Virus record (IMG/VR): IMGVR_UViG_3300046516_001816
Location: 220,984-284,983 of that record
Length of the DNA: 64,000 nt
Reading direction: 5' to 3' (one strand)
A model generated the notes under the pieces. That model saw only the letters and a program-made list of their open reading frames with translations, ran no database searches and was not told the DNA's origin. Both the position numbers and the translations under genes were made by a program. Shown here in pieces: positions 6,144 through 57,525 of the stretch. Position 1 is the first letter of the stretch, and each line of letters opens with the position of its first letter.

Positions 6144-6202
6144 CTTAGTCCAATGAAGACAGCTCAAACCCTTTATAACGCAATAAACCAAGGAGTAGTA
6201 AA

Positions 6203-6658: not shown

Positions 6659-6723
6659 GCTAGCGGAGTAGGAACGGGGGGAGCGCTGAGCTCCCCTTCT
6701 TTCAATCAGTTGGAGAAAAGAAC

Positions 6724-6921: not shown

Positions 6922-6973
6922 CCTCAACACCAATAACACATCTAAACCAACTGTTAGGGAAAAGGAAATCATC

Positions 6974-7405: not shown

Positions 7406-7480
7406 CGTAAGCCGGCCACCTTCGGGTGGCCTTGTAGTTTTCTCCGCAATAAATCCAAACCAATCTTCAGGAGTAGCAAA

Positions 7481-7741
7481 ATGAAAGAAGCAATCAAGAC
7501 CTTCGCTTGTGTCGGTGCTTACGCAGCTGGTGTGGTAGTGGGCATGACGGTGGCAGGCCAGACCATCATCGCTATCGAAAAGCGCAGCGCGCGCAAGAAG
7601 CTGGAAAAGGCTGTGAAGGAAGGTCAGGCTGCTGCTGCGGATCTCGACACGCTCGAGAAGCGCGCCGCGATGGCCACGACCTTCGGTGGCAACGCACTCG
7701 CCATGATGGGTGCCGCCGTCGCCACGACGCACCGCAAGTAA
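7481..7741 (+). CDS. small Gly/Ala-rich membrane protein
   Basis: AGGAG RBS; FACVGAYAAGVVVGMTVAG. Confidence 0.8.
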   Translation: MKEAIKTFACVGAYAAGVVVGMTVAGQTIIAIEKRSARKKLEKAVKEGQAAAADLDTLEKRAAMATTFGGNALAMMGAAVATTHRK

Positions 7742-7824
7742 AGCGCAGTTCTCCCCCAACAACCCAGCATCCAAGCAGGCGTTCACGAAGAGCGCCTAGT
7801 TAAACACATTCAAGGAGTAGGAAC

Positions 7825-8025
7825 ATGTCGGCATTGAAAGACGTTGCAAAGTGCGCAGCCATTGGTGTAGCCGTGGGCGCAGGTGTGATCGGTGGTTTCT
7901 ACGTGGGTGGCAAGCTCTGCAATGCAAGCTTCAAGGCAGCAGACTGGACCAAGTCGAAGTTCTCGAAGAACAAGGCTGCCCAGGCCGACGCCGCACCCGC
8001 TGAGACGCAAGCCGCAGCGAGCTAA
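7825..8025 (+). CDS. small Gly-rich membrane protein
   Basis: AAGGAG RBS; AAIGVAVGAGVIGGFYVGG. Confidence 0.8.
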   Translation: MSALKDVAKCAAIGVAVGAGVIGGFYVGGKLCNASFKAADWTKSKFSKNKAAQADAAPAETQAAAS

Positions 8026-8088
8026 TCCCCCCTCTCGTAGCGTGCCGGGGTTCGCCCCGGCCGCTATGCCGTTAAACTGGAGAGCGTA

Positions 8089-8349
8089 ATGAATATCGTC
8101 TTATGGTGGTATGTGAATGATCCGCTGGGGACGATTCTCACTGCACTTTCGTTCCTGGCAGTTCTGGCAATGGTTCTGATCCCTCTGGCTATCGACCGCG
8201 TCTACGGTCATCAGACAGACGAAGAACTGGTCCAACAAATCCTGGCTGAGATTCAAGCCAAACTTAATAACAAATCCCAAACCAACGTCACTGATGAAAA
8301 CGTTCACGAACAACGAAGTCGCAACAACGATGCGCAGGTTGTACGATAG
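8089..8349 (+). CDS. single-TM hypothetical protein
   Basis: GGAG RBS; ILTALSFLAVLAMVLIPLAI. Confidence 0.65.
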   Translation: MNIVLWWYVNDPLGTILTALSFLAVLAMVLIPLAIDRVYGHQTDEELVQQILAEIQAKLNNKSQTNVTDENVHEQRSRNNDAQVVR

Positions 8350-8596
8350 CAAGGCTGTCTTTTCGCATGTGCTGAAACAGCTGACCCCGGTGGTGCAGGA
8401 CCCCACGCTGGATGACGAACTTATCACCAGCATGGAGCGTGACGCGATCGAGTTTCTGGACAAGGTCCTCCACTCGGTCGCCGGCAGTACCGTCTGGTGT
8501 AAGGCGATTGAGATTGCCTACACCCCCAACACCCTGGTGGGCTACAAGCGTGTCGCGGAATACTACCGCCGCGCTGAAGCCATCCAGGCGCTGTAA
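8294..8596 (+). CDS. hypothetical protein
   Basis: 100 aa ORF with phage-like codon usage. Confidence 0.7.
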   Translation: MKTFTNNEVATTMRRLYDSKAVFSHVLKQLTPVVQDPTLDDELITSMERDAIEFLDKVLHSVAGSTVWCKAIEIAYTPNTLVGYKRVAEYYRRAEAIQAL

Positions 8597-8662
8597 GCAG
8601 TAAGTCATAATACCCGGGCCTCTTCGGAGGTCCACACATAAACCAAGACTAGGAGCATCACC

Positions 8663-9274
8663 ATGAACGCAATCGTTAAGCAAGCTGCTGTGAAGAACGT
8701 GAAGAAGGCATCGGACGGCGTGCTGCGTATGGCCGCCAGCGCACTGAAGTTCCGTGAAGACGAATTCCGTATCGGCCAGACCACCACCGCGCAACTCGGT
8801 AACCCGGGTGACACGGACTGGACTGATGAAACGCACGCCAACGTGCCGGTCGTGATTATCGACAAGCAACGCTGCACCGTGACGTTCAAGATGTATTACC
8901 TGATCACCAAGGTGGGCGATCGGGAATACGTCGGCCGTGCGAGCGACTCACGCGGCAGCGACAGCGTCGAGGGTGACGTGTACTGCACGAACGCCCGGCG
9001 CTTTGGTAGCAAGGCGCAGAAATGGACGGGTATCACGACTTTCCTGGGCGCGGCGGACTCGCTGCATTTCACGTTGCCGATCTACGACGCGGAGATGAAC
9101 GCGCAGAAGATCACGAGCGCCCAGCTCGATGCCGCACTCCAGTGTCTGCGTGCTTACTTCGATCCGCTGATCGCGGAAGCAGAAGCCGAAGGCAACATGG
9201 AAGCGCGCCAACTGTGGGCACACGACTTCGCAGAGAAAGAGTTGATCGTGCGCCTGATGTGGCAAAACTCGTAA
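8663..9274 (+). CDS. hypothetical protein
   Basis: AGGAG RBS; 203 aa. Confidence 0.8.
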   Translation: MNAIVKQAAVKNVKKASDGVLRMAASALKFREDEFRIGQTTTAQLGNPGDTDWTDETHANVPVVIIDKQRCTVTFKMYYLITKVGDREYVGRASDSRGSDSVEGDVYCTNARRFGSKAQKWTGITTFLGAADSLHFTLPIYDAEMNAQKITSAQLDAALQCLRAYFDPLIAEAEAEGNMEARQLWAHDFAEKELIVRLMWQNS

Positions 9275-9320
9275 TTGCAGGGGTGTCATCCGGCACCCCC
9301 GTTCTTTTAAGGAGAACAAC

Positions 9321-9476
9321 ATGGACAAGTTCATGTGGTGGGTGCGGGAAGACGGCTCGGCCGAGTTGGTCGAGGTGTTGAAGCAGGTGCGTACGGGCGC
9401 TTTGGCGATACGCGATCGCAACGTGTATCACCTGGTGCTGGCGGATGAGCTCCAGAAGGAACATCCGTATTGGTAA
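9321..9476 (+). CDS. small hypothetical protein (51 aa, not in ORF track)
   Basis: AAGGAG RBS; MDKFMWWVREDGSAELVEVL...HPYW, followed by a hairpin. Confidence 0.7.
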   Translation: MDKFMWWVREDGSAELVEVLKQVRTGALAIRDRNVYHLVLADELQKEHPYW

Positions 9477-9532
9477 TCTCATGGGGGAACTTCGGTTCCC
9501 CTCTTATTACACTAAACCATTCGAGGCAGTTC

Positions 9533-9955
9533 ATGGATTACATTTTCGGTATTTCGTACGCGCAGTCAGTTTACCTGATGGGCGTGTCGTTGTGCATTCT
9601 GTTTCAGCTTGTGGTCGGCAGCTGGCTGCATTTCGGCAAGAGCGACATGGCAGTGGTTGCGCGCATGACGCGTGAGGAGAAGCTCGCCACGCTCTACCTG
9701 CGTGTGGGTTTGGTGGGCTACGTCTGCTGGATGCTGGTCGCCACCGCGTTCTTCACGTATTTCTTTCTCACGCTGGGTTGGTACGTCGCCCTCGTCGTGG
9801 GATTGATCGGTGGTGCAGTGCTCATGCCGTTCCAGTTCTACAAGCTGGTGAAGATCAGCAAGAATCAAGACGCACTCAATCGTGCGAAACTTTTCATGGA
9901 TTACGATCTGCAATGGCCGAGCATGCGCTCGCTGAGCGTAAAGCGCGGTCGTTAA
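9533..9955 (+). CDS. multi-pass membrane protein (about 3 TM)
   Basis: GAGG RBS; three hydrophobic segments. Confidence 0.75.
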   Translation: MDYIFGISYAQSVYLMGVSLCILFQLVVGSWLHFGKSDMAVVARMTREEKLATLYLRVGLVGYVCWMLVATAFFTYFFLTLGWYVALVVGLIGGAVLMPFQFYKLVKISKNQDALNRAKLFMDYDLQWPSMRSLSVKRGR

Positions 9956-40067: not shown

Positions 40068-40673
40068 ATGCTCCGCGTGCCCTATGGTTCGGGGTCCATC
40101 ATCTCCATCGTAGGGATTGACCCGGGGAGCGACACCCTGGGTACCGCGATTCTTTGGGTCGATCTCGCTGCGATGCAGATTGTGTCGTCGTCTGCCAAGA
40201 CGTTTCGAGGGGAGAAGCTGCTCTCGAATGACTCATGGACCGAATCGCTTTATGGCAATCGCTTGGCGCGTATCTGGGCACTGGAGAATGAGCTGGTTCA
40301 TCTCTTCGAGCACGTGCAGCCGTTCATGATTGCCAGTGAGGCGCCGTTTGTAAACAAACGGTTTCCGCAAGCGGGCTTAGCGCTCACGGAAGTCGTCTGT
40401 GCTGTAAAGTCAGCTGTGATCCGGTTTGACAAATGGAAGCCACTGTATCTGATCGATCCTCCCACCGTAAAGCGGGCTATCAACGCGAAGGTGATGGGGG
40501 GTGAGAAAGGTAAAGAGGAAATGAAACGGGCGGTATTGGAAGTCTCTGATCTCCACTACGCCGGTGACACTCCACTCGACACTCTGGACGAGCACAGCGT
40601 TGATGCGCTAGCGGTGGCGTATAGCCGCTGGCACTCTTTTTTGAAGGAGATGAACTGTGTCGAAAATCCTTGA
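40068..40673 (+). CDS. ruvC: RuvC-like Holliday junction resolvase
   Basis: IVGIDPGS, IASEAPF, PPTVK, DEHSVDALAVA acidic catalytic motifs. Confidence 0.85.
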   Translation: MLRVPYGSGSIISIVGIDPGSDTLGTAILWVDLAAMQIVSSSAKTFRGEKLLSNDSWTESLYGNRLARIWALENELVHLFEHVQPFMIASEAPFVNKRFPQAGLALTEVVCAVKSAVIRFDKWKPLYLIDPPTVKRAINAKVMGGEKGKEEMKRAVLEVSDLHYAGDTPLDTLDEHSVDALAVAYSRWHSFLKEMNCVENP

Positions 40674-43496: not shown

Positions 43497-44120
43497 TTAG
43501 AAGAATACTCCTGTCTGCCCATCGATGTTGTATGGATCGCCCTGAGGCGGCGGGGCCGTCCCATCACCGCCCGTGCCACCGGTGCCACCCCCCGAGGTAC
43601 CATCTCCACTCGTGCCATCGGAAGTCGGAGGCGGCGGCGGGGTCACGCCCGCGATATTTAGCACGACACTGCCACTGAACGCGGGGGAGGCCGGATTGGC
43701 AGTCATCGTGATCGGCCACACGGGCGCAGGGATCGGCGTATTGAGCACGTCCGCTTGCGTGAGCTGCAACCCGTAGTAGGCATTGATCAAGGGTAGCAGC
43801 GTCCAGATGTCCGTCGGGTAGGCGGTGATCGGAATCGGTACCACGGTCCCGCCTGACGCATTCGCCGCGGGCAGGAAGTCCGCGAGGTTCACCCGTTTAT
43901 ACAACAGGGTTTGCGTGCCGGTGAGTTGCTGCCAGGGCATCGCGGGATCCGCTTCGATGGTGATCACGGTGTCGCGCTGATAGCGATCGCCGGTCAACGG
44001 CGTCTGGGCAATCGGATTGCCGAAGAGAATGCCTTGTGGGGGCACCAGGAAACCATTCGTGGCAAAGATCAAATCCCGCAGAATCTGCTCGGCGGGTTTG
44101 TTGTAATTGAAGTACGACAT
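43497..44120 (-). CDS. virion structural protein (tail/baseplate-associated family)
   Basis: LLYKRVNLADF, LLPLINAYYGLQL, ANPASPAFSGS; AAGGAG RBS; G/P/T-rich tail. Confidence 0.6.
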   Translation of the reverse strand: MSYFNYNKPAEQILRDLIFATNGFLVPPQGILFGNPIAQTPLTGDRYQRDTVITIEADPAMPWQQLTGTQTLLYKRVNLADFLPAANASGGTVVPIPITAYPTDIWTLLPLINAYYGLQLTQADVLNTPIPAPVWPITMTANPASPAFSGSVVLNIAGVTPPPPPTSDGTSGDGTSGGGTGGTGGDGTAPPPQGDPYNIDGQTGVFF

Positions 44121-44175
44121 GGGGACTCCTTGGTAACAAAATAAAAGCCAGGGATTGCTCCCTGGCTCTCAAGCT

Positions 44176-46680
44176 TCAGGCAGCGATGCCCATCACTTCA
44201 GCCCGAGCAATACGCTCACCCGCAGCATGGGCTTGATGCAAGAAGCGCCAGTCCAGCTGCTCGTAATCGTAGTTCCACTCGTTAAAGAACGCCGCCGCCA
44301 CGTAACCGTTCACGATACAGGGCGGACCTTCCAACACCGGAATGTAGACCGGCGTCATCGGATCTTCATCCAGCTCGACCACGGTGCGTTTGACGAAGCC
44401 GTTCAGGTGCGCGTACTCGACTTCGCCCTCGTAGACACTGTTGATGTCCTTGAGGCCTTGAGTGAGCCCACCTTCGACTTCAGCGCGCATATACGCCGCG
44501 TCGCCCGACCACCACCACTGCTTGCCGCCCGCCGCCGGTCGACTCCAGAGCGGATGGTCAGCCACCCAGCGCGTGTGTGGATCTTCCTTCATGGTGAGCA
44601 TCTTGCGACCCGTACCCAGAATCGCTTCATGCAAGCGCAACATCTTCGCCGGACCCGTGGGCGTCATCAACAGATCCCCGGGTACCAGCGACTCGATCGG
44701 CTGCCAGGTATAGTCGCCCATCAGCACGCGCGAGCCCGCGACGAAACACGACACGGAGCAATGACTGCCAGTACCGCCACCGGTGCAGACCGGCGGAGGC
44801 GGAGGCGGCTGACCGTTGATATAACCAGCCGGCGGTTGACCCGACTGCGGCCAGCCCGAGATATGACAGTAGCCCGAACGCGGACCACCTTGCCACACAC
44901 CCGTGTATGCACCGTACGCCGTGTAGACCCCGTTGCCGTTGGCCAGCCAGCTGTACGACCAGCTGTTGGAGAGCGTGAAGTTATCGCCCAGACTCGAGGA
45001 GAACGTCATGCCATCGAGCGACCCGTTCAGCACAATCACCGTGATCACGTTGTTCCAGCGGTAAAAGCCCTGGACTTGTGCGCCACCCGGCGCATTGAAC
45101 CAGGTCCAATTCCCCGTGACCGTGTTGTCCCCGCCGGTGATCACCGGGCTGGTCCCCTGATAGATCAGCAAGTCACGACCAAAGTTCCCACCACACGCGC
45201 CCGAGTAGTTCACGTTGTAGTACTGCGTGCCTGTCTCATAGAACGCAAAGCCCGAGTTGTTAATCTGACCCTGGCCCCAGTTCAAGTCGGCTTCCAGCTG
45301 ACCGAGGTTCCACGGCCCCAACGCCCCGAGGTGATACTGCGCGGACGTGCCGTGCGGATTCGAGCGGTTGTTGATGTGGCCCCACATCACGTTGTAGTTC
45401 GAATTGAAATAATTCTGGTACGCCGTTTGGGCTGCGCTCAAGGCCGCATTGAACTGGTTCGCCGTGTAGCCACTGATCTGGCTGATATTCACCGCGTGCG
45501 GATTCGCGGTATTGGCGATGTGGTTGTTGAGCGTCGTCTGCAAGCTCGCCAGGGCGCTCGCCGTCCACGTACCAATCTGCGCCGGCGTCACTACGTGCGG
45601 GTTGGCCTTATTGGCAATGTGCGTATTGAGCGTCGTGGTGTCGGCACTCGCCTCGGTCGACACGGGGGTTGTTGCATTGGTGATCGCCGTCTGAATCTGC
45701 GAGATCGTCAACGTCCCCAATCCCGTGGTCGAATCCTGGTGGGGATTGTTCAGGTTGTTGATGTGCGCATTCATCGTGGTCGCATTCGTGCTGATCGTAC
45801 TGGTGATCGCCGTTTGCGCTGCACTGATGTTGCTGTTCACGGTGGACGTCGCATACATCCCCAACTGGACCAGGGTGACCTGGTGCGGATTGTTGGTGTT
45901 GGCTTCGTGGGTATTTAACGTCACCACCAACGCCGCATCGCCTGCCTGCATCGCGGTATGTTCCACCGCAATCGCGGCGGTTTCTTCCGCTTGCGTGTAG
46001 GCGCCCAACTGATGCGCCATCAACTGGTGCGGGTTGGTGCGATCCGCTTCGTGGGCTGCGAGCAGCGCCATCTGCGTATTGAGCGGACCCAGCGCCAGTT
46101 GTTCCTGCGCGTCAGCGTAGGCTTTAATCGCATCCTGCGAGATCGGGTCACCCATCAACGAGAGCTGCGTCATGCGTTGCAGCGTATGCACCACGTATTC
46201 AAACGTGATCATCCCCGCTTGCCCGATGTCATGATACTGCGCGGACACGGGGGTTGATTGCAGCGAATCAATCACTGAGGGCCACTTGGTCGGACGGGTA
46301 TCGGGTTCAGCTTGCAGCAGGTCAGCGACGATCCCATTTTGCGGCGTCTGATAACCCGCACCCAGGGCCTGATAGTCGATCTTCACATTGGCCGACACAG
46401 CCGGATCCAGAATCACCACCACACCACAGATCGTGTCGGCGTTGGGTTTACCGTACTTGGTCGTGGCTAAGTCATACACCACGGCAGCGAAGTACTGGGC
46501 ACTGGTGAGCTTCTGACCGCTCGCCACGTCCGTCACCACGAGCGTCGACGCGAAGAACGCCCCGTAGTTCGGCGCCAGCGCCCGAATCTTCGTGGTCCCA
46601 ATCGCATGCACTTCGCCCGTAATGTCGTTCGTTGTCGCCTTCCCCGTGGGGTCCAGCGGCAAAGTCAAAACGGTTGACAT
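44176..46680 (-). CDS. tail fibre protein with C-terminal Hint domain
   Basis: Shared N-terminal LPLDPTG domain; HxxNxxNPH repeats; C-terminal CFVAGSRVLM...VADHP...CIVNGYVA. Confidence 0.8.
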   Translation of the reverse strand: MSTVLTLPLDPTGKATTNDITGEVHAIGTTKIRALAPNYGAFFASTLVVTDVASGQKLTSAQYFAAVVYDLATTKYGKPNADTICGVVVILDPAVSANVKIDYQALGAGYQTPQNGIVADLLQAEPDTRPTKWPSVIDSLQSTPVSAQYHDIGQAGMITFEYVVHTLQRMTQLSLMGDPISQDAIKAYADAQEQLALGPLNTQMALLAAHEADRTNPHQLMAHQLGAYTQAEETAAIAVEHTAMQAGDAALVVTLNTHEANTNNPHQVTLVQLGMYATSTVNSNISAAQTAITSTISTNATTMNAHINNLNNPHQDSTTGLGTLTISQIQTAITNATTPVSTEASADTTTLNTHIANKANPHVVTPAQIGTWTASALASLQTTLNNHIANTANPHAVNISQISGYTANQFNAALSAAQTAYQNYFNSNYNVMWGHINNRSNPHGTSAQYHLGALGPWNLGQLEADLNWGQGQINNSGFAFYETGTQYYNVNYSGACGGNFGRDLLIYQGTSPVITGGDNTVTGNWTWFNAPGGAQVQGFYRWNNVITVIVLNGSLDGMTFSSSLGDNFTLSNSWSYSWLANGNGVYTAYGAYTGVWQGGPRSGYCHISGWPQSGQPPAGYINGQPPPPPPVCTGGGTGSHCSVSCFVAGSRVLMGDYTWQPIESLVPGDLLMTPTGPAKMLRLHEAILGTGRKMLTMKEDPHTRWVADHPLWSRPAAGGKQWWWSGDAAYMRAEVEGGLTQGLKDINSVYEGEVEYAHLNGFVKRTVVELDEDPMTPVYIPVLEGPPCIVNGYVAAAFFNEWNYDYEQLDWRFLHQAHAAGERIARAEVMGIAA

Positions 46681-46696
46681 GATTGTTTCCTATTCT

Positions 46697-48103
46697 TTAA
46701 TGGTACGAATTCGCGTACACCTGCGCATTCAACTGATTGACCCAGTCCTGATACAACCAGCCCCCGATCTGATACGCGGTCACCCCGTGCGGATTGCTAC
46801 CATTGCCTGTGTGACCATTGATCCAGTTCGCTTGGGAGTTCAACGCGTTGGCTGCCGGCGTCGAGTACCCGTTCTGAATCTGGGCCGTGATCTGGGCACC
46901 CGTCCACGTGCCCACTTGGGCGGCCGTCACCCCGTGCGGGTTCGAATGGTTCGCAATATGGTTGTTGATCGCGGTCTGCTCGGCGTTGATACTCGCCGTA
47001 TCCCATGCGCCGATTTGAGTCAGGGTCAACTGGTGCGGATTGGCGCGACTGGCCACGTGAGCCGTAAGCGCAGCATCCTGCGTATTCATCTGCGTCGAGA
47101 TCGGCGTGATCGCGGCACTGATCGTGGTGCTGATCTGCGCGGTGGTTTGCGCATTCAATTGAACCAAGGTGACCTGGTGCGGGTTACTGTGGTTGGCGAT
47201 GTGCTCGTTCATATCGAGCGAGTCCGACGCCAGCTGCGCATTGATCGCGTTTTTGATCGCGTTCAGGTTCGCATCCGTTTCCGCCGTGGTGTAGCCACCA
47301 ATGCTGTCCGCGGTATCGTGGTGCGGATTGTTGTGGTTGGTCGCATGCGCCTGAATGTCGTTGTTGACCCCCAGGTCAGCGCTTTGACGGTTGCTCGCTT
47401 CCACCGCAATCTGACTGTCCACATTGCTCGACGCGTACACATTCACCTGTGTAAGTGTCGTTTGGTGTGGATTGTTGTAGTTCTGGATATGGGCCTGCAA
47501 GGCGGCGGCAAACGTCGAGATGTCCAACGTGCGACCGGTCAACTGCTGGTCAATCCAGGTGAGCGTAGAGTCGTAGCTCGCGGTCTTGGCCAAAGCCATC
47601 GCATTCAAGCACAGCTCCAGTGCCGTGACGACGTAGTCCCAGTCGTACGTATCACCCAGCCAGTGCATATGCGGCACCACCGGGTAGGCGTTGGGCTTGC
47701 CTGTGATATTGTTCAGCGCCACCGCTCGATCATCGTTGGCGAGCGTCTCCAATTCCTGAAGCAAGGTGCCCGTCGGATTGGACTTCGGACCCCCCAGGGC
47801 TTGATACGAGAGCGACACATTGGGCGAGACCGTGGGGTCGGTGACGACGACCACGCCCCAGACTTCTTCGCCGGTGAGCTGCGTGGCTTCGGTGTCCAGA
47901 AACTGGAACTCAAACTGCGCGCTTGTCAGGGGCTTGTTGGTGAACAGGTCCCACAACTGCATGCTCGCGCCAAAGAACGCGCCTGCTTGCGGAGCGATCG
48001 CCCGGTTCGGCGCCGTCCCAATCGCGCGGTTTTCCCCCGTCACGTAGTTGTTATTGCTGTCCCCCGTCAAATCCAACGGGTAGCGGTAGATATTCGGAAT
48101 CAT
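46697..48103 (-). CDS. tail fibre protein paralog
   Basis: YPLDLTG N-domain and HxxNxxNPH repeats. Confidence 0.8.
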   Translation of the reverse strand: MIPNIYRYPLDLTGDSNNNYVTGENRAIGTAPNRAIAPQAGAFFGASMQLWDLFTNKPLTSAQFEFQFLDTEATQLTGEEVWGVVVVTDPTVSPNVSLSYQALGGPKSNPTGTLLQELETLANDDRAVALNNITGKPNAYPVVPHMHWLGDTYDWDYVVTALELCLNAMALAKTASYDSTLTWIDQQLTGRTLDISTFAAALQAHIQNYNNPHQTTLTQVNVYASSNVDSQIAVEASNRQSADLGVNNDIQAHATNHNNPHHDTADSIGGYTTAETDANLNAIKNAINAQLASDSLDMNEHIANHSNPHQVTLVQLNAQTTAQISTTISAAITPISTQMNTQDAALTAHVASRANPHQLTLTQIGAWDTASINAEQTAINNHIANHSNPHGVTAAQVGTWTGAQITAQIQNGYSTPAANALNSQANWINGHTGNGSNPHGVTAYQIGGWLYQDWVNQLNAQVYANSYH

Positions 48104-48116
48104 CTCGTCTTCCTAC

Positions 48117-49589
48117 TTAGTTGTGCACGCTGGCCAAGTAGTTGATCGCGTTGGCCGCCGACCCACCCGGACCCTGCAAAAGACTGATGGCATACGCCAG
48201 CTGACCCGACGTGTACGCGCCTCCGGTGTTGGAGACGTTATCGCCGTGGGGGTTGCTGTAGTTCGTCACGTGCGACTGGATCGTCCCGTTCAACGAGTTG
48301 ATCTGATTGGCCAGTGACGTCCACGCGGAGTTGATGCTGTTGTTCATCGTCGTCGCACTGTAGACGCCGGAGCCGTCCACGTTCGAGGTGACGATATTGG
48401 AATACACATCGCCGTGCGGATTGCCTGCGTTATTGGCATGCGAGTTAAACGGCACGATGATATTGGTGCTGATCGTATTGTACGTCCACGTGCCCACGTT
48501 CGCCGCGGTGTCGCCGTGCGGATTGTTCGTGTTGCCCGTGTGCGCTTGCAATGCGCTTTGAAACGTATTGACCTGCGACTGCAAGGTATTGGCAGCGGCC
48601 GTGACAGCGGCCGCAATCTGCGGGGTCGTCCACGTGCCGATCTGGGCAGCGGTGACCTGGTGCGGATTGTTGTAGTTCTGGATGTGCGCGTGTTGCGTGC
48701 TTTCATTGGCCGCAATCGTGGCTTCCAGCGCCGTTTGCATCGCTGTCATCGCGGCATCGGACTGCGCGCGCGTCATGCCACCGACTTGCGCCGGGGTCAA
48801 AGCGTGCGGGTTATTGCCGTTGTTGATGTGCGCGGTGAGCGAGGCTTCCACCGCCGCATCGCCTGCCTGACGGGTGGTGGTTTCCCCGGCGATATTCGCA
48901 ACCGTTTCCGTGGTGGTGAACGAACCGATCTGATGCGCGCTCACTTGGTGCGGATTGGTAAAGTCACTTTCGTGCGCTTGCAGTGCCGCATTGGCCGTGG
49001 CAATGTAGTTCTGCAATTCGGCGACCACGCCCTGGGCATAGGCGAGCAGAGCTTCTTGCGCTGCGCCCTGACCTTGCGTAATCGCTTTACCCAGCGTGTC
49101 GGTGGCCGAAACCAGATACTCGGTCCCAAACACATCATCGGCGTGGTGCTTGTGGGGTGCAGGCGGATACACACTTTGCTTGGCCTGTACTTCATCCCAC
49201 GTCACCGGTGCATCATTGAGATCGAGTCCCGCCAACGCTGCTTGGGCGGCAACACTGTTGAGGCTATTGATGCCACCCACAGCCTGATAGGTGACGCTCA
49301 CTTGATTGCTGACCGTGGTGTCTACAATCAGAATCACGGCATCGACTTGCTGACCGTATGCCACCGAGCTATCCAGATCCATCTCAGCCGGATAATACTG
49401 CACGTCTTTGGTGAGCGTGAGTCCCGAGGTGAGGTCTTTCACCACCACCGAGTCGCGAAAGAACAACCCGTAGTTCAACGGGAAGGCGCGCGTACCGACG
49501 GTGCCGATGCTGTGTACTTCGTTTTGAATGAGGTTGCTTGACGCCGAACCCGTGGGATCCAGCGGCAACACTAAATTCGGCGTGCTCAT
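48117..49589 (-). CDS. tail fibre protein paralog
   Basis: LPLDPTG N-domain and HxxNxxNPH repeats; GGAG RBS before ATG 49589. Confidence 0.8.
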   Translation of the reverse strand: MSTPNLVLPLDPTGSASSNLIQNEVHSIGTVGTRAFPLNYGLFFRDSVVVKDLTSGLTLTKDVQYYPAEMDLDSSVAYGQQVDAVILIVDTTVSNQVSVTYQAVGGINSLNSVAAQAALAGLDLNDAPVTWDEVQAKQSVYPPAPHKHHADDVFGTEYLVSATDTLGKAITQGQGAAQEALLAYAQGVVAELQNYIATANAALQAHESDFTNPHQVSAHQIGSFTTTETVANIAGETTTRQAGDAAVEASLTAHINNGNNPHALTPAQVGGMTRAQSDAAMTAMQTALEATIAANESTQHAHIQNYNNPHQVTAAQIGTWTTPQIAAAVTAAANTLQSQVNTFQSALQAHTGNTNNPHGDTAANVGTWTYNTISTNIIVPFNSHANNAGNPHGDVYSNIVTSNVDGSGVYSATTMNNSINSAWTSLANQINSLNGTIQSHVTNYSNPHGDNVSNTGGAYTSGQLAYAISLLQGPGGSAANAINYLASVHN

Positions 49590-49667
49590 CTGAATGAACT
49601 CCAGACCCTTATTAACAGACAAAAGGGCTCAAGGTGCCCGAAAGCACCCTGAGCCCCAAAGAGAGAT

Positions 49668-52556
49668 TTACGACGAGAGGTTCCAAGCCGAGAAGCCCGA
49701 CGGCACTGCGTTGGTAAACGCATTGACGCCTGGATTGAGCGTGAGCGTATCGCCCTTCTCGGAGATCGACACGCCGAGGTACACCGGACCGGTCGTGCCG
49801 CCCGGGGCGAGAATCGCCGCGATCGAGATACCGCCCGTACCGGTGGCCGGGTTTTGGTTCGCGAGGATGTCGCCATTCCACTGACCCGAAGCCGGGTTGT
49901 AGAACCACACCTTCTGCGCGGCGAAGTCCACCGCTACGCCGAGTTCGTCGCCTGTGGCGGGCAGGGTGGCCCCGATGCCGCCATTGGTGAACGCACCGTT
50001 GTAGCTGATGCCGCTGGTGGCGGTCGACGGCTGCGTGAACATCATGATCGAGTTCGTATCGAAGCCGAGCGAGTGCGTGCCGGCGGTGCTGGCATTGCCC
50101 AGACCGAAACCCACCCCGCCATCGAGACTGTTGATCGACACTTCTGCGTAGACCTTGCCCGTGGTGCGACCGTAGGTGGCGAGCTCCGTGCGCCAGGCAT
50201 TGCTGGTATTGCTGGTGACCGTCATGTTGCCATTGGAGAGCACCATGTCGGACGGCAACACCGTCACGTTGAAGCTCATCGCGGTCGTCGCCGGCGGCGT
50301 CGTACCCGAGTTGTTCACAGCCTGGACCACGGTCTTGAACGCGGTGGTCAGCTGCGACACGACGTTGTTCAATTCCGACACGGTGGCAAAGGTTTCGGCC
50401 ACCGCGTAGATGATCCCAGCCGGTGCGGTGTTTTGCACCGAGATCGAGCCCAGGAAGTTGTTGTTGTACTCGCTGAAGCCATTGACCGTGATCTGGTTGG
50501 CGCCGCCCGGCGTTTGCATCCACAGCGTGGCGAGCTTGGTCCCGGAATTCACCGTGTAGCCAAACTTCACCGTCGTGGTGTTGCGTCCCGTGAGCGAGAG
50601 CACTTGCAGCTCCACGCTATCCGCCGAGGCGGTGTTACGCACCGACATGCGCACGTACCACGAACCCGATTGCGTGTCGCCCGTGGCATCGCCACCGGTC
50701 ACCAGCATCTGCAAGTCCGGATAGACGGTTTGACCCGCCGTGCCTTGCATCGCCATTTGCGCGATCGGGGTCCAGAGCAACGGATCCGTCGTATCAACTG
50801 CGGCCGGAATCGTGTCCTGCGGGGTGACCATTTGACTGGTCCACAACTGAGCATTGGTCGACGCCGTGATCGAGCTCGAGAGGGCTGCTTGCGACAGACC
50901 ATTCAAAGCCGTCGCGTTGGCTGCCGTCCCACTCAGAATCGCCGAGGTCAGCTGCGCTTGCGTGAGACCAAACGCTTGCGTGGCATTGGCTGCGGTGCCC
51001 GACAGGATCTGTGTGGTGAGCGCCGCAATCGTCATGCCGCCCAGCTGGTTAGCGTTCGCCGCCGTACCGTTCAGGATCTGCGTGGTCAACTGCGCCACCG
51101 TCATGCCGTTGAGCTCCGTGGCGTTGGCCACCGTCGCATTCGCAATGTAGGTATCCCATTGCGCCGGGGTCATGCCGCCGAACATTTCCGAGTCGCTTGC
51201 CGTGCCACCGGAGACGTACGAGATCAGCTGCGCGGGCGTCATGCCGCCCACCATCGTCGCGTTGTTCGCCGTACCAGCCAGAATAGCGGACGTCACCTGC
51301 GCCATCGTCTGGCCACAGAAGAGCGACGTGTCCGCTGCCTTACCCGTCTTGAGCAAGTAGCTCGCCAGCGTGCTGTCCATCTGAGCCGTCGAGTAGGCTC
51401 CGACTTGCGCTGCCGTCACCTGGTGAGGGTTGGCATAGTTCGTAATGTGGGTGTTGAGCACCGCATTCGAACCCTGGTTCGCAATGGCCGCCGCGGTTGC
51501 CGCCGGCGTCATGAACAGGTTGTTGGCCGTGCCTGCGACCGCATCGCTATTTTGCGCGACACTGAAGTTCGGCACATTGCCCAAGCCCACTTGCGCCGCA
51601 CTGGTTTGGTGCGGGTTGTTGTAGTTGAGAATGTGCGCTTGCAGGTTATTGCCCACCGAACTGTTGATCGCGACCATGGTGGTGGCCGGGGTCATATACA
51701 GATTCGTGGCCGTGCCCGTCTGGGCATCGGTGTTGCTCGCCGGTGCGTAGTTCGCGACATTGCCCAGCCCGACCTGCGTTTGCGTTACGCGGTGCGGATT
51801 GTTGTAATTGGCAATGTGAGCGTTAAACGAACCCAGCACCTGCGTTTGGATCGCCGCGGCGGTGGCCGCCGGTGTCATATACAGCGTCGTCGACGTGCCC
51901 GCTGCCGCGTCGCTGTTTTGCGCCACCGCGTAGTTCTGGACATTGCCCAGCCCGACTTGCGCGGAGCTCACATGGTGCGGGTTGCCGAAGTCGGCTTCGT
52001 GCGCAGCCAAGCCCGTGGAGCCGGTCGATTGCAGTGCGGTCGTGACGCTGTTAATCGCCCCCACCACGCTACCCATATTAACCATGTCATTCACGTCCCA
52101 CGCATGCGCGGTGGGCGGGAACGCATAGGGCGTACCACTGACTTCTTCCCACGACGTGATGCGCGGGTTGTCCGCGACGTCGGCGAGAATCGTGTTGATC
52201 TGGGAGGTCGCCACCGTCCACTGTCCACCAACGGTTTGGTAGTTCAGCTTAACGATGCCAGCCAGATTCGTGTTGATAAACAAAAGCGAACCGTAGACGC
52301 GCATAGCGGTCGAACGGCTGGCCGAGATAAACCAATGCGCCGGGTAATAATCGACGCCTTCCTCCAAGGTGTGCAGGGTACCCTGCGTGTCTTGATAGGT
52401 AACAGCGAGCGTATCAGCGAAGTACGGGGCAAACTCCGGCACGATGATGTGCTGATCCCGAAAGTTCTGCGCGACCAGTTGCTGCTGTTCCCCTGAAATC
52501 AGGTTCGAAACCAACGAACCCGTCGGGTCGAACGGATATGAGATGGGTGTTGTCAT
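49668..52556 (-). CDS. tail fibre protein with C-terminal SPRY/B30.2-like domain
   Basis: YPFDPTG N-domain; NPH..QVGLGNV.N repeats; GTA.NA repeats; GKVYAEV..GFGLG..LGVAVD..VWFYN. Confidence 0.8.
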   Translation of the reverse strand: MTTPISYPFDPTGSLVSNLISGEQQQLVAQNFRDQHIIVPEFAPYFADTLAVTYQDTQGTLHTLEEGVDYYPAHWFISASRSTAMRVYGSLLFINTNLAGIVKLNYQTVGGQWTVATSQINTILADVADNPRITSWEEVSGTPYAFPPTAHAWDVNDMVNMGSVVGAINSVTTALQSTGSTGLAAHEADFGNPHHVSSAQVGLGNVQNYAVAQNSDAAAGTSTTLYMTPAATAAAIQTQVLGSFNAHIANYNNPHRVTQTQVGLGNVANYAPASNTDAQTGTATNLYMTPATTMVAINSSVGNNLQAHILNYNNPHQTSAAQVGLGNVPNFSVAQNSDAVAGTANNLFMTPAATAAAIANQGSNAVLNTHITNYANPHQVTAAQVGAYSTAQMDSTLASYLLKTGKAADTSLFCGQTMAQVTSAILAGTANNATMVGGMTPAQLISYVSGGTASDSEMFGGMTPAQWDTYIANATVANATELNGMTVAQLTTQILNGTAANANQLGGMTIAALTTQILSGTAANATQAFGLTQAQLTSAILSGTAANATALNGLSQAALSSSITASTNAQLWTSQMVTPQDTIPAAVDTTDPLLWTPIAQMAMQGTAGQTVYPDLQMLVTGGDATGDTQSGSWYVRMSVRNTASADSVELQVLSLTGRNTTTVKFGYTVNSGTKLATLWMQTPGGANQITVNGFSEYNNNFLGSISVQNTAPAGIIYAVAETFATVSELNNVVSQLTTAFKTVVQAVNNSGTTPPATTAMSFNVTVLPSDMVLSNGNMTVTSNTSNAWRTELATYGRTTGKVYAEVSINSLDGGVGFGLGNASTAGTHSLGFDTNSIMMFTQPSTATSGISYNGAFTNGGIGATLPATGDELGVAVDFAAQKVWFYNPASGQWNGDILANQNPATGTGGISIAAILAPGGTTGPVYLGVSISEKGDTLTLNPGVNAFTNAVPSGFSAWNLSS

Positions 52557-54931: not shown

Positions 54932-54999
54932 TGTTGTCTCTTAGATAAAAGATACACCATCGCGGCATGGTGTGGAAAACAGATAAACGGGTGTGCAAA

Positions 55000-57525
55000 A
55001 TGCGATACACCGCTTTGATTTTGAAGCATTTCAAGCGCTTTGCGCTCAATCAGATCTCGCTGTTCGATCTGCGTCCCACGGAGCAAATCCAGCTGATCCT
55101 CGGCACCAATGGGTCAGGCAAGTCCTCGCTGCTCGGTGAGCTCACGCCCCTGCCCGCGAACGCCGCGGACTATCTCAAAGGGGGCAGCAAAGAGATCCAT
55201 ATCTCGCATCGGGGTTCGACCTATGTGCTCATCAGTTCGTTTGAATCGGGTAACAAACACTACTTCCGTAAAGACGACGAAGAGCTGAATCCGGGTGGCA
55301 CCCAAGCGGTGCAAAAGGAACTGTGCAAACAGGAATTCGGCGTCACACCGGATACGCACGAATTGTCCACAGGATTGTTGCGCTTCACGGGCATGGGTCC
55401 GTCTCATCGTAGGGAATGGTACACCCGGATGTCCGACGTCTCGTTCGACTATGCCATTGGAGTCTATGACAAACTGCGTAAGGAACACCGCAGTGTGGTC
55501 GGGGCGCTGGATCTGGATAAGAAACAACTGGTCACCGAGCAGTCCAAGATCATCACCGAAGAAGAGCAGCAGTTGCTTGTGAATGACGTGAAGGATCTGC
55601 ACCGGGAACTGGAACGTTTGCTGGAAATCAAACGCCGCCCAGATCGCCCGATGGACGTCGTGGAAGAGCAACGCCGCTTAACCGAACGCGATCTGCTGGA
55701 GCTCTCCAATAAGCTGCTGAACCTCAAGGTCGAATCGCCCGCGCACCTATACCGGGACGAGTGGGGCATTCTCCAACCGCTGGAGTTTAAGTCGATCGAT
55801 GGCGTCAATGCCTATATCGACGATCTGCGTGAACAGATTGCCGCACAGAACGCGGTGATGGAAAAGCTGGTGGCCGATCACAGCAAGCAGAAAGACACGG
55901 TCGAAGTCCTCAAGAAGCAAGGGGCGGACGGGATCGAGTCGGTGCGCAAGAAGATCAATGAGTGGGCTGAGAAACGCGTGGAGGCCATGAAGGGCCTGCG
56001 TCTGAAGCTGGACTTTAGTCATACTGACCCCGTGCAAGCCAAACGCACGATTGAAGCCATCAAGCACGATCTGGAAGCCTTGGTGTTTGAGCTACCGGTG
56101 AATACCAGCAAGACGTTTGGATCAGCGGTGCTCGGCGAGCTGAAACAATCGGCGCAGACCCTGAAGGACCAGCACCGGCGTAAGGTGAATGAGCAAGCGC
56201 AACTCAGCGCGCGTAAGCAACACGCGGAAGAACATCGCGAGAAGGGCGTCACTACCTGTCCGAAGTGCAATCATTCTTTCCATATGGGCATGTCCGATGC
56301 GCAGATGGACGAGCTCAAAAAGCGACTCGTGATCGTGGGGCAAGAGATCGAGAAGCTCGAGGAACATCTCAAGAAGCTCGAGGCAGCCATTGCGGAACAG
56401 GAAGAGTACGGGGCACGGTATCGAGCGATTATTCAGTTGACGCGTTCCACCCCGGCGCTGAAACCGTTCTGGGAGTACGTGGCCGAGAAGGAACTCTTGG
56501 TGAATGCGCCGCGCAGCGTGATGAGCACGATGCAGATCCTTGAGAACGACGTCGACCTCGAGTGCATGATCGATGCGATGAATGCAGAGATCGAGGAGTT
56601 GAAGAAACTCCTGGCGAAATCCGAAGAGCTCGGCGATCAGAATCTGGGCGAAGCGGTGGAGAAGCTTAACACCCTCACCACGGAAATCGAAGCCCACACC
56701 AAAGCACTGGCGCAGTCACGGCGCGAACTCAACGACTTCCATACCTATCGCAAGCAGTTGCAAGAAGCGATGGCGTTGGAGTTGAAGATCAATGTGGCGA
56801 TGGTGACGTTTGAAAACCTCACGCATGAAGCCGTGGAGACGCTGCGCCTCAGCACGATCGAACAGTGTTTCCGCCAAACCCAGTCGACACTCGCCCGTAA
56901 GGAAGAAGTACTCAAAGCGGTGCATCAGCAAAAGGCCATTGTCGAGCATCTGAAGACGACCATTGTGCGCCGGACGATGGAAGAAGAAGCGCTTAAGCAT
57001 TGTGTGCGCGAACTCTCCCCCACGGACGGGCTCATTGCAGAGGGCTTACTCGGGTTCATTAAGAATTTTACCCACCAGATGAATCAATTGATTCGCAAGA
57101 TCTGGGCGTACCCGTTGGAAGTCCTGCCGTGCGGGATCTCCAGCGAACGCGGCGCGGAACTGGATTATAAGTTTCCGCTGATGGTCGGCACACGGGACAA
57201 TATCGTCTCGGATGTCAGCCGCGGCAGCTCTGGAATGCAAGAGATCGTGGACCTGGCGTTTAAGGTGATCGGTCTTAAGTATCTGGGACTGGAGCACGGC
57301 ACGTTGATGCTGGATGAATTCGGCAAGACGCTCGACTTGGAGCACCGCACAGCGGCCGTCATGGCCATTAAGATGCTGATGGAAACGAAACCGTTCTCGC
57401 AGCTCTTTATGATCTCGCACTACGAATCGCATTACGGAGCTTTCTCGAACGCGCAGGTCTGTGTTCTCGATGCTCGCAATATCGCTGTTCCTAAAACCCA
57501 TAACACTCACGTCACCATTCAGTAA
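55000..57525 (+). CDS. sbcC: SbcC/Rad50-like SMC ATPase
   Basis: Walker A GTNGSGKS, coiled coils, zinc hook CPKC, signature SSGM, Walker B LMLDE, ISH. Confidence 0.9.
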   Translation: MRYTALILKHFKRFALNQISLFDLRPTEQIQLILGTNGSGKSSLLGELTPLPANAADYLKGGSKEIHISHRGSTYVLISSFESGNKHYFRKDDEELNPGGTQAVQKELCKQEFGVTPDTHELSTGLLRFTGMGPSHRREWYTRMSDVSFDYAIGVYDKLRKEHRSVVGALDLDKKQLVTEQSKIITEEEQQLLVNDVKDLHRELERLLEIKRRPDRPMDVVEEQRRLTERDLLELSNKLLNLKVESPAHLYRDEWGILQPLEFKSIDGVNAYIDDLREQIAAQNAVMEKLVADHSKQKDTVEVLKKQGADGIESVRKKINEWAEKRVEAMKGLRLKLDFSHTDPVQAKRTIEAIKHDLEALVFELPVNTSKTFGSAVLGELKQSAQTLKDQHRRKVNEQAQLSARKQHAEEHREKGVTTCPKCNHSFHMGMSDAQMDELKKRLVIVGQEIEKLEEHLKKLEAAIAEQEEYGARYRAIIQLTRSTPALKPFWEYVAEKELLVNAPRSVMSTMQILENDVDLECMIDAMNAEIEELKKLLAKSEELGDQNLGEAVEKLNTLTTEIEAHTKALAQSRRELNDFHTYRKQLQEAMALELKINVAMVTFENLTHEAVETLRLSTIEQCFRQTQSTLARKEEVLKAVHQQKAIVEHLKTTIVRRTMEEEALKHCVRELSPTDGLIAEGLLGFIKNFTHQMNQLIRKIWAYPLEVLPCGISSERGAELDYKFPLMVGTRDNIVSDVSRGSSGMQEIVDLAFKVIGLKYLGLEHGTLMLDEFGKTLDLEHRTAAVMAIKMLMETKPFSQLFMISHYESHYGAFSNAQVCVLDARNIAVPKTHNTHVTIQ

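What the first reader, a model, noticed from the sequence alone, without database searches (positions are those of the whole stretch)
44176..44760. Tail fibre ending in a Hedgehog-like, non-splicing Hint autoprocessing domain
Seen: after a PPPPPP/GGG linker the fibre continues S-CFVAGSRVLMGD (Hint block A, catalytic Cys), VADHP (block B His, with the usual Thr replaced) and PVY...CIVNGYVAAAF. It has no terminal His-Asn and carries a ~35-aa aromatic/helical tail. Knowledge: inteins need the C-terminal Asn to splice, whereas Hedgehog Hog domains lack it and use the Cys thioester to cleave and attach a nucleophile to the upstream protein, guided by a C-terminal recognition region. Inference: this fibre may self-cleave at Ser|Cys, acting as a removable chaperone or covalently capping the receptor-binding tip with a small molecule or partner protein.
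Basis: partly seen in the sequence, partly recalled or inferred. Interest (0 to 1): 0.8.

Follow-up and report, generated by a model that had tools for sequence, protein, structure and literature searches.

The report
Self-cleaving Hint cap on phage fibre
The last of four tail-fibre genes of an uncultured phiKZ-like jumbo phage ends in a genuine Hedgehog/intein-type (Hint) module that cannot splice and probably cuts itself off the fibre; it belongs to a large, unstudied family of such end-caps on phage fibres, with no sign of Hedgehog-style adduct attachment.

Summary
Observation confirmed. The gene at 44176..46680 (-) encodes an 834-aa fibre. It has a phiKZ-type N-terminus and shaft, a beta-sandwich tip, a low-confidence Pro/Gly linker, a Hint domain (residues 645-811) and a 23-aa helical tail.

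- **Fold:** AlphaFold2 gives pLDDT 94.8. Foldseek hits BIL, Hedgehog and mini-intein structures (TM 0.63-0.73), and a family profile hits the PI-SceI intein at 1.7e-9.
- **Active site:** Cys645 and His709 are invariant across the 82-sequence family alignment. No aligned member has the terminal His-Asn, and no C-extein exists, so only the N-terminal Ser644|Cys645 junction can react.
- **Family:** 260 clusters at 50% identity. The module is almost always at the extreme C-terminus (median 10 residues follow it) and sits on unrelated fibre scaffolds.
- **Conservation:** the Hint module is the best-conserved part of the protein and the tail the worst.
- **Hint-less orthologues:** two sister jumbo phages have the same tip but stop inside the linker, close to the predicted cleavage site.

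Best reading: a self-removing, cargo-less terminal pro-domain, comparable in role to the S74 intramolecular-chaperone caps. Cleavage itself is inferred, not shown. The "Hedgehog-like adduct" idea is not supported: there is no SRR/ARR, and the tail is short, not hydrophobic and not conserved. In this clade the block-B Ser is replaced by Val. I rate it a new variant of a known kind.

The parts
44176..46680 (-). Whole fibre gene, 834 aa plus stop; last of four tandem paralogous fibre genes
   Evidence: ORF list. PHROG phrog_2163 at 1e-57 plus tail-fibre PHROGs. Residues 1-460 match fibres of 128 cultured phiKZ-like phage records.
45790..46677 (-). N-terminal virion-attachment domain and start of the NPH-repeat shaft (residues 2-297), shared with the three upstream paralogues
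   Evidence: phrog_2163 match at residues 2-297; the same family heads the paralogues.
44851..45249 (-). Distal beta-sandwich tip domain (residues 478-610), the probable receptor-binding part
   Evidence: AF2 model of residues 440-834: beta strands with pLDDT about 90. This is the most variable structured region among orthologues, at 43-64% identity (87% in the nearest relative P0002). No fold match was obtained for it.
44749..44820 (-). Pro6/Gly-rich linker (residues 621-644), ending HCSVS with the -1 residue Ser644
   Evidence: Translation. pLDDT below 50 over residues 626-643. Hint-less orthologues terminate inside this linker.
44746..44751 (-). Predicted scissile junction Ser644|Cys645 (Hint block A nucleophile)
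   Evidence: Translates to SC. Cys is present in 117 of 120 homologues and in all 82 aligned sequences; the -1 residue is Thr, Ser or Cys in 107 of 120.
44248..44748 (-). Hint core (residues 645-811), including a family-specific insert (~713-765, QWWW motif, Glu734) and the conserved C-terminal extension NE..YDY..LDW
   Evidence: AF2 pLDDT 94.8. Foldseek hits to BIL2 6y75, Hedgehog 1at0, BIL 2lwy and mini-inteins. Profile hit to PI-SceI at 1.7e-9. Column conservation.
44554..44556 (-). Block-B His709 (invariant); the motif here is W-V-A-D-H where the family consensus is W-S-E-E-H
44305..44313 (-). Block-G end: residues 795-797 Ala-Ala-Ala occupy the place of an intein's Val-His-Asn, so there is no terminal Asn
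   Evidence: Block-G columns of the family alignment: consensus IIVNGYVVGAG, here IVNGYVAAAF. The register against intein block G is my reading of the motif, not a structural superposition.
44179..44247 (-). Clade-specific C-terminal helix (residues 812-834)
   Evidence: AF2 helix at residues 811-829. 9-61% identity among orthologues. Variable length and sequence. GRAVY 0.13.
43497..44120 (-). Downstream DUF7941 virion protein gene; syntenic, but not specific to Hint-bearing fibres
   Evidence: Pfam DUF7941 at 1.6e-21. Conserved downstream in L004 and L006-L010, also downstream of the Hint-less orthologues, and present in cultured jumbo phages that gave no hit in the Hint-domain tblastn searches.
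46697..52556 (-). Three upstream paralogous fibre genes (468, 501 and 962 aa), none with a Hint module
   Evidence: phrog_2163 hits. An HMM scan of all six frames of the window finds the module only once.

Best explanation
The fibre is made as an 89-kDa precursor. Its receptor-binding tip is followed by a flexible Pro/Gly tether and a cargo-less terminal Hint domain. The Hint domain performs the first step of Hint chemistry: an N-to-S acyl shift of the Ser644-Cys645 peptide bond, using Cys645 and His709. It has no terminal Asn, no C-extein and no adduct-recognition region. The thioester is therefore most likely resolved by water or a cytoplasmic thiol. That would release a ~21-kDa Hint fragment and leave a ~68-kDa mature fibre ending in the linker (...GSHCSVS). 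On this reading the module is a self-removing pro-domain, a transferable cassette found on many unrelated phage fibres. It plays the part that Peptidase_S74 intramolecular-chaperone caps play on other fibres and spikes: transient help with assembly or solubility, or masking of the tip, during morphogenesis. Shown here: the fold, the residues, the architecture, the family distribution and the existence of Hint-less orthologues. Inferred: the cleavage itself and the biological role.
For: The Hint fold has high confidence and profile homology to inteins; 71 of 82 family members hit Pfam Hom_end_hint. Cys1 and the block-B His are invariant in the alignment, and the -1 residue is restricted to Thr, Ser or Cys in 107 of 120. 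No aligned member has His-Asn at block G. The module is terminal in almost all members, with a median of 10 residues after the core and only 1 of 120 having more than 60, so nothing downstream is released and only the upstream junction matters. It is fused to unrelated fibre scaffolds: lambda-type tail-tip, collagen-like, T4-like distal, phiKZ-like and Ig/PA14-bearing. It is separated from the tip by a low-confidence linker. It is the most conserved region of the protein (78-89% identity among the closer orthologues) while the tip varies (43-64% in all but the nearest relative); that pattern suits a housekeeping processing module and not a receptor-binding surface. Two sister jumbo phages carry the same tip and the same synteny but stop inside the linker, 7 aligned residues (P0165) or further (P0166) before the predicted cut, with no Hint remnant. 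A fibre ending there is therefore viable. In Hedgehog, the Hint part without the SRR carries out thioester formation, while transfer to cholesterol requires the SRR (PMC4695875).
Against: No cleavage was observed; everything about the chemistry is by homology. In this clade the block-B Ser (92% of the family, equivalent to the intein Thr) is Val706 and the adjacent Glu is Asp708, which could slow or abolish the acyl shift. The Hint-less orthologues and the flexible tether argue that the module is not an obligatory folding nucleus, so the 'chaperone' part of the role is weak. I could not inspect the active-site geometry because model coordinates are not exposed, and I could not model trimers.
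Confidence: 0.55

Rival explanations
1. Hog-like ligation. The thioester at Ser644 is resolved by a specific nucleophile (a lipid or small molecule, a lysine of a partner or neighbouring chain, or an amine or hydroxyl on the host envelope), and not by water. The fibre tip would end up covalently capped, cross-linked or even covalently attached to its receptor.
For: The architecture is the same as Hedgehog/Hog proteins (cargo, then terminal Hint without Asn). The best PDB match is Tetrahymena BIL2 from the BUBL1 locus; from my own recollection, not checked here, BUBL BIL domains are proposed to ligate a ubiquitin-like domain to targets. The -1 residue is strongly restricted to Thr, Ser or Cys, and Glu734 in the family-specific insert is 98% conserved with no assigned role. 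Cysteines recur just upstream of the junction.
Against: There is no SRR/ARR-like region. The tail is 23 aa, not hydrophobic (GRAVY 0.13) and poorly conserved, and most family members have about 10 residues after the core. Hint-less orthologues with an ordinary carboxyl end exist. No conserved partner gene was found: DUF7941 also follows Hint-less fibres. In a thiol-rich cytoplasm a standing thioester would be thiolysed before release (general intein chemistry, my inference).
Confidence: 0.15
2. Uncleaved structural knob. The Hint fold has been co-opted as a permanent distal domain (adhesin, oligomerisation knob or spacer). Cys645 and His709 would be kept for structural or metal-binding reasons.
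For: Loss of the block-B Ser/Thr in this clade (Val706). The confident compact fold with a family-specific insert and an extra helix could form an interaction surface.
Against: Invariance of exactly the two residues needed for the acyl shift across 82 sequences at 35% mean identity. The restricted -1 residue. Conservation is higher than in the tip, which is the opposite of what a receptor-contacting end domain shows. It is connected by a low-confidence tether, and orthologues do without it.
Confidence: 0.17
3. Selfish or neutral passenger. This would be an intein-derived cassette that persists at the 3' ends of fibre genes because it removes itself and so does not harm the fibre, spreading by the frequent recombination of fibre genes and bringing no benefit to the phage.
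For: Patchy presence and absence between close relatives. Occurrence on unrelated scaffolds. High conservation is also expected if loss of self-cleavage would cripple the fibre.
Against: There is no homing endonuclease or other mobility function in the module or next to it. The ~55-aa insert is too small and shows no Pfam hit. There are 260 diverged clusters with a conserved family-specific insert and C-terminal extension. A subset is consistently linked to a radical-SAM enzyme and a Cys tract, which points to an integrated maturation role.
Confidence: 0.1

Closest known systems
Hedgehog/Hog autoprocessing domains (Pfam PF01079; PDB 1at0, 6tyy)
   Same: Cargo followed by a terminal Hint domain. 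A Cys nucleophile in a CF(P/V)xG block A, a block-B His, no terminal Asn, and therefore cleavage only at the upstream junction. Foldseek TM 0.67-0.68.
   Different: No SRR/ARR of about 70 hydrophobic residues with motifs K and L, which the transfer step requires (PMC4695875, PMC2362128). The -1 residue is Ser/Thr/Cys; in Hedgehog it is Gly (my recollection, not checked here). It has a family-specific ~55-aa insert. The host is a bacteriophage. Sequence similarity is limited to block A.
Bacterial intein-like (BIL) domains, A and B types, and Tetrahymena BUBL BIL2 (PDB 2lwy, 6y75/6tmm)
   Same: Non-splicing Hint domains in variable regions of surface or secreted proteins that cleave a flank. These are the best structural matches (TM 0.72-0.73). 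Like B-type BILs, the module lacks the intein C-terminal motif (PMC7765530).
   Different: BIL domains are typically internal with sequence on both sides, and A-type BILs keep His-Asn and cleave C-terminally (PMC7765530). This module is terminal and cargo-less. Pfam Hint_2 matches only 15 of 82 members, and only at block A.
Pretoxin-HINT of polymorphic toxins (PF07591)
   Same: A Hint peptidase at the end of filamentous stalks, including tail-fibre-like repeats, used for autoproteolytic release (PMC3482391).
   Different: PT-HINT precedes a C-terminal toxin that it releases. Here nothing follows the Hint (median 10 residues). The genome loci sharing only the block-A pattern are other Hint families that match blocks A and B and lack the rest of the module.
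Peptidase_S74 intramolecular chaperone domains of phage tailspikes and fibres (K1F endosialidase, T5 pb1)
   Same: This is the closest functional analogy: a transferable C-terminal cap on trimeric phage fibres that removes itself after assembly (established knowledge; cited in the fibre literature found).
   Different: Unrelated fold and chemistry, and no S74 match in Pfam. S74 caps are contiguous with the triple beta-helix they nucleate, whereas this cap hangs on a low-confidence tether. Self-removal here is inferred, not shown.
Class 1 inteins (PI-SceI, DnaB and gp41-1 mini-inteins)
   Same: Same fold and block A/B chemistry; the best sequence-profile hit is PI-SceI at 1.7e-9.
   Different: No block-G His-Asn, no +1 nucleophile, no C-extein and no endonuclease, so it cannot splice.

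Membership tests
Hint superfamily | Hint (horseshoe beta) fold | tested here: met
   AF2 pLDDT 94.8, pTM 0.91. Foldseek probability 1.00 to more than 30 Hint structures, TM normalised by target 0.6-0.73. The ESM Atlas structural and feature neighbours are all Hint families.
Hint superfamily | Block A nucleophile (Cys/Ser) as first residue, and block B His | tested here: met
   Cys645 and His709 are invariant in the 82-sequence alignment. The block-B Thr/Ser position is Val in this clade.
Hint superfamily | Autocatalytic N-S acyl shift or cleavage at the N-terminal junction | not testable with these tools
   Needs protein expression with a C645A control, or virion mass spectrometry.
Inteins | C-terminal (His-)Asn plus a +1 Cys/Ser/Thr and a C-extein to ligate | tested here: not met
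   Block G reads IVNGYVAAAF (family consensus IIVNGYVVGAG). Only 23 non-conserved residues follow the core.
Hedgehog/Hog domain | Hint followed by an SRR/ARR (~70 residues, hydrophobic, motifs K and L) required for adduct transfer | tested here: not met
   The tail is 23 aa, GRAVY 0.13, 9-61% identical among orthologues; the family median is 10 residues. Definition from PMC2362128 and PMC4695875.
Hedgehog/Hog domain | Full-length match to the Hog Hint profile (PF01079) above the gathering score | tested here: not met
   The window protein gives no PF01079 hit. In the relatives scanned individually, PF01079 matches cover block A only and fall below the 29.7-bit cutoff; 46 of 82 alignment members match PF01079 at E<=0.01.
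BIL domain, A type | Conserved C-terminal His-Asn with C-terminal cleavage | tested here: not met
   No His-Asn in any aligned member. Definition from PMC7765530.
BIL domain, B type | All intein motifs except the C-terminal one; embedded in variable bacterial secreted proteins; N-terminal cleavage | tested here: inconclusive
   Motifs A and B are present and the C-terminal motif is absent. However, the module is terminal and virus-borne, Hint_2 matches only 15 of 82 members at block A, and no BIL-B reference alignment was available for direct comparison.
Pretoxin-HINT | A downstream toxin or cargo domain that is released | tested here: not met
   Only 1 of 120 members has more than 60 residues after the core.
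Peptidase_S74 intramolecular chaperone | S74 fold and sequence with a Ser-Lys dyad | tested here: not met
   No S74 hit in Pfam and the fold is Hint. The analogy is functional only.

The most novel reading that the evidence does not exclude
The terminal Hint is a ligase-like warhead and not merely a self-removing cap. Its thioester would be resolved by a defined nucleophile, so that the fibre's new C-terminus becomes covalently joined to something: a neighbouring chain, an envelope lipid or sugar amine of the host (covalent adsorption), or an upstream Cys to form a thiolactone ring. In the radical-SAM-linked relatives, the Hint would serve as a self-cleaving 'follower' domain of a RiPP-like maturation of the (Asn-Cys)n tract at the fibre tip.
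Probability: 0.12. Interest if true: 0.9.

Novelty: new variant of a known kind. Interest (0 to 1): 0.55.

Why it matters
Hint domains are known as inteins, Hedgehog processing domains, BIL domains and toxin-releasing peptidases. This one represents a large family: 260 clusters at 50% identity, nearly all from uncultured viruses, with only three cultured phages among about 50,700 records. These are cargo-less Hint caps on phage receptor-binding fibres, and I found no paper describing them; no Pfam model matched more than block A. If they self-cleave, they are a second, chemically distinct solution to the maturation problem that S74 intramolecular chaperones solve. That matters for predicting the true mature ends of receptor-binding proteins, for phage host-range engineering in laboratory strains, and as a source of compact N-terminal-cleaving Hint domains for protein chemistry. 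The linked radical-SAM and Cys-tract subset hints at post-translational cross-linking of fibre tips, which would be new for phage structural proteins.

Tried and rejected
- **Pfam, PHROGs and PDB sequence search with the window protein alone.** These gave only a sub-threshold Hint_2 hit (E=0.04) and noise, so the assignment needed the family profile and the fold.
- **Nucleotide search against cultured phages.** No match.
- **The search for related loci with the 82- and 12-sequence alignments.** A six-sequence alignment found nothing in genomes.
- **Degenerate DNA pattern for CFPAGxxVLMADG.** It found 22 genome loci, but 21 were other Hint families matching blocks A and B only.
- **DUF7941 as a dedicated partner or nucleophile.** Rejected: it also follows Hint-less fibres, and it occurs in cultured jumbo phages that gave no Hint hit.
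- **The tail as an SRR-like recognition region.** Rejected on length, hydropathy and conservation.
- **A second Hint copy or a radical-SAM gene in the window.** None found.
- **Fold search of the two-domain model to identify the tip fold.** Only Hint matches were returned, so the tip stays unassigned.
- **Literature searches for a described terminal Hint on phage fibres.** They found only inteins in terminases, PT-HINT toxins and S74 chaperones.
Full report
**1. What is in the sequence**

The minus-strand ORF 44176..46680 encodes 834 aa. It is the last of four tandem paralogous fibre genes: 49668..52556, 48117..49622, 46697..48103 and 44176..46680. All four open with the phrog_2163 'virion structural protein' domain followed by tail-fibre repeats. 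A DUF7941 virion-protein gene follows at 43497..44120.

The window comes from IMG/VR contig UViG_3300046516_001816, which is 284,983 bp long. A 972-aa virion protein in the window has homologues in 289 jumbo-phage records, best in Burkholderia phage FLC9 (51% identity) and then Ralstonia phages. This is therefore an uncultured phiKZ-like jumbo phage. Close relatives sit in Caballeronia and Paraburkholderia assemblies, which suggests a Burkholderiaceae host.

- the linker INGQPPPPPPVCTGGGTGSHCSVS (residues 621-644);
- Cys645 in CFVAGSRVLMGD;
- His709 in WVADHPLW;
- the end of the core, PVYIPVLEGPPCIVNGYVAAAF;
- NEWNYDYEQLDW, and then a 23-aa tail.

**2. Is it a Hint domain?**

On its own the window protein only reaches Pfam Hint_2 at E=0.04, and phmmer against the PDB gives noise.

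An exhaustive HMMER search with the last 194 aa found 260 clusters (at 50% identity) with E<=1e-3 and 137 with E<=1e-10. A profile of 82 of these hits the PI-SceI intein at 1.7e-9, other inteins, a BIL domain and, weakly, Hedgehog. Of the 82 members, 71 match Pfam Hom_end_hint individually, but only over block A. The Achromobacter phage JWF and 2-1 homologues pass that model's gathering score.

AlphaFold2 with this alignment gives pLDDT 94.8 and pTM 0.91. Foldseek then returns only Hint structures:
- Tetrahymena BIL2 6y75, E 1e-6, TM 0.73;
- the gp41-1 intein, TM 0.72;
- the Clostridium thermocellum BIL domain 2lwy, TM 0.72;
- Hedgehog 1at0 and 6tyy, TM 0.67-0.68.

The ESM Atlas neighbours are likewise all Hint families. 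The fold assignment is secure.

**3. Active-site and end motifs**

- In the 82-sequence alignment (35% mean identity) the invariant columns are Cys645, His709 and Trp712. Glu734 (98%), Arg692 (97%) and Trp811 (96%) are nearly invariant.
- Among 120 full-length matches, 117 have Cys at position 1, and the -1 residue is Thr, Ser or Cys in 107.
- Block B is W-S-E-E-H in the family, with Ser at 92% in the place of the intein Thr.
- Block G reads IIVNGYVVGAG in the family and IVNGYVAAAF here. No aligned member has His-Asn.
- The core is followed by a conserved extension (N/D-E-x-x-Y/F-D-Y-x-x-x-x-W). After that, sequence varies in length and content.

**4. Architecture of the family**

- **Terminal and cargo-less.** A median of 10 residues follows the conserved Trp, and only 1 of 120 members has more than 60.
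- **Highly varied upstream parts.** They include a lambda-type tail-tip fibre domain, collagen repeats, T4-like distal fibre, phiKZ-type fibres, and Ig and PA14 domains. Seven of nine sampled proteins have tail or fibre PHROG hits.
- **Linker character.** The stretch just before Cys1 is low-complexity Gly/Pro or Cys-rich.
- **Mostly from uncultured viruses.** Only three cultured phages among 50,697 records carry the module: Achromobacter phages JWF and 2-1 (annotated only as Caudoviricetes) and Providencia phage PSTNGR1, an autographivirus. JWF's copy is already annotated 'Hom_end-associated Hint family protein'. In IMG/VR the full module occurs on contigs of 5-324 kb.
- **Rare in cellular genomes.** Of 22 bacterial or archaeal genome loci sharing the block-A DNA pattern, only one (a Rhodospirillales MAG) has the whole module. 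The rest are other Hint families.

**5. Evidence bearing on function in this phage**

(a) A second AF2 model of residues 440-834 shows a confident beta-sandwich tip (residues 478-610, pLDDT about 90). A linker with pLDDT below 50 (residues 626-643) follows, and then the Hint domain. The two domains are tethered and do not pack against each other.

(b) Among the orthologues, the Hint core is the best-conserved segment. Against P0003-P0007 it is 78-80% identical, and against the nearest relative P0002 it is 89%. The shaft is 56-68% and the tip 43-64% in all but P0002. The linker is 21-67% and the tail 9-61%. A distal receptor-contacting domain would be expected to vary most; a processing module would be expected to be conserved.

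(c) A search with the tip domain found two orthologues of 642 and 633 aa on ~283-kb contigs in Paraburkholderia assemblies. They share the tip (52-53% identity) and stop inside the Pro-rich linker. One ends ...PPAPPPPPQEAGGGA, which aligns seven residues before the window's Ser|Cys junction. Their loci have the same synteny (four fibre genes, then DUF7941). The gap after the fibre gene is 200 bp in one and zero in the other. A six-frame HMM scan finds no Hint remnant in either. A fibre ending at about the predicted cleavage point is therefore a natural, viable form.

(d) DUF7941 is not a dedicated partner. It follows Hint-less fibres too, and it occurs in cultured jumbo phages that gave no hit in the Hint-domain searches.

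**6. Mechanism**

With Cys1 and the block-B His retained, and with no terminal Asn, no +1 nucleophile and no C-extein, the only Hint reaction available is the N-to-S acyl shift at Ser644|Cys645 followed by resolution of the thioester.

In Hedgehog, the Hint part without the SRR carries out thioester formation. Transfer to cholesterol needs the ~70-residue hydrophobic SRR (PMC4695875). Hog domains are defined by that SRR/ARR with motifs K and L (PMC2362128). Here the post-core tail is 23 aa, has GRAVY 0.13, is a predicted helix, and is the least conserved part of the protein.

I therefore favour simple self-removal by hydrolysis or thiolysis. This would give a 68.0-kDa fibre and a 21.3-kDa Hint fragment. 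The module would be a transferable pro-domain, functionally comparable to the S74 intramolecular-chaperone caps. The step from 'can form a thioester' to 'does cleave in vivo' is inference. The Val706 substitution is a real caveat. The chaperone role in particular is weakened by the flexible tether and by the Hint-less orthologues.

**7. Rivals**

- **Hog-like ligation to a specific nucleophile.** Kept at about 0.15. The restricted -1 residue, the conserved Glu734, the recurrent upstream cysteines and the BUBL-type best structural match leave room for it.
- **A permanently attached knob.** About 0.17, mainly because of Val706.
- **A selfish passenger.** About 0.1. Its presence is patchy, but it has no mobility function, and a subset is integrated with a maturation enzyme.

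**8. Comparison with known families, and novelty**

It is a member of the Hint superfamily by fold and catalytic residues. It fails the defining tests for:
- inteins (no Asn, no C-extein);
- Hog domains (no SRR/ARR);
- A-type BIL domains (no His-Asn);
- PT-HINT (no cargo).

B-type BIL membership is inconclusive. No Pfam model matched more than block A. The literature searches found no description of a cargo-less terminal Hint on phage fibres, only automatic annotations. I rate it a new variant of a known kind, of moderate-to-good interest, with a simple and decisive bench test.

**9. Side finding**

In six independent lineages (JWF and 2-1; L011; L013 and L014; L016; L022; and the Rhodospirillales MAG L078) the Hint-tipped fibre carries an (Asn-Cys)n / CxCxC tract immediately before Cys1. 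A ~450-aa radical-SAM enzyme lies within a few genes of it. Loci without the tract lack a close homologue of that enzyme. Counting five lineages with the tract against sixteen without (the count made before L078 was added) gives Fisher p of about 5e-5. L020 and L021 have only a distant radical-SAM gene about 5 kb away. About 28% of family members have at least three Cys in the 12 residues before Cys1. The window phage has neither the tract nor the enzyme.

Noticed in passing
L001:5077-8598, L002:5083-8589, L011:5530-7910, L013/L014 (~5026-9891), L016:5332-10438, L022:1760-4040, L078:595-3400: Hint-tipped fibres with an (Asn-Cys)n / CxCxC tract directly before the Hint Cys1 (for example L022 CPNCNCVCNCNYCNCNYNNCNCNCDCS|CFPAG) always have a ~450-aa radical-SAM (Radical_SAM + Fer4_12) gene one to four genes downstream. 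Fibres without the tract do not. This suggests radical-SAM modification (thioether cross-links or similar) of the fibre tip, with the Hint as a self-removing follower domain. It is not present in the window.
   Followed up: partly
window 44176-52556 (-): Four tandem paralogous fibre genes (962, 501, 468 and 834 aa) share the phrog_2163 N-terminal domain and NPH-type repeats but have different distal ends. Only the last carries a Hint module. The same four-gene array is conserved in the sister jumbo phages (L094, L095).
   Followed up: partly
L094:6001-7929 and L095:6001-7902: Orthologous fibres of jumbo-phage-sized contigs (~283 kb) found inside Paraburkholderia genome assemblies lack the Hint module and end in the Pro-rich linker. 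A Caballeronia arationis assembly carries a Hint-bearing orthologue (P0160). This suggests a Burkholderiaceae host range for this phage group, and that jumbo phage genomes are carried in culture assemblies.
   Followed up: partly
window 44155-45918 (+) and other long ORFs antisense to the fibre genes: Long open frames on the opposite strand of the fibre genes (for example 587 aa, Arg-rich). They look like the usual antisense artefacts of GC-rich (59%) coding DNA and not genes. They were not searched.
   Followed up: no
window 54967-57525 (+), 40068-40673 (+): An SbcC-like nuclease subunit (phrog_77, 1.6e-83) and a RuvC-like resolvase (phrog_159) flank the structural block. These are ordinary jumbo-phage DNA-metabolism genes.
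   Followed up: no
P0022, P0050, P0056, P0071, P0106, P0123 (family members of 170-200 aa): Some family members are almost nothing but the Hint module, with a 5-12 residue leader (for example MNCNT|CFPKG). They could be truncated gene calls at contig ends or genuine stand-alone modules. I did not check which.
   Followed up: no
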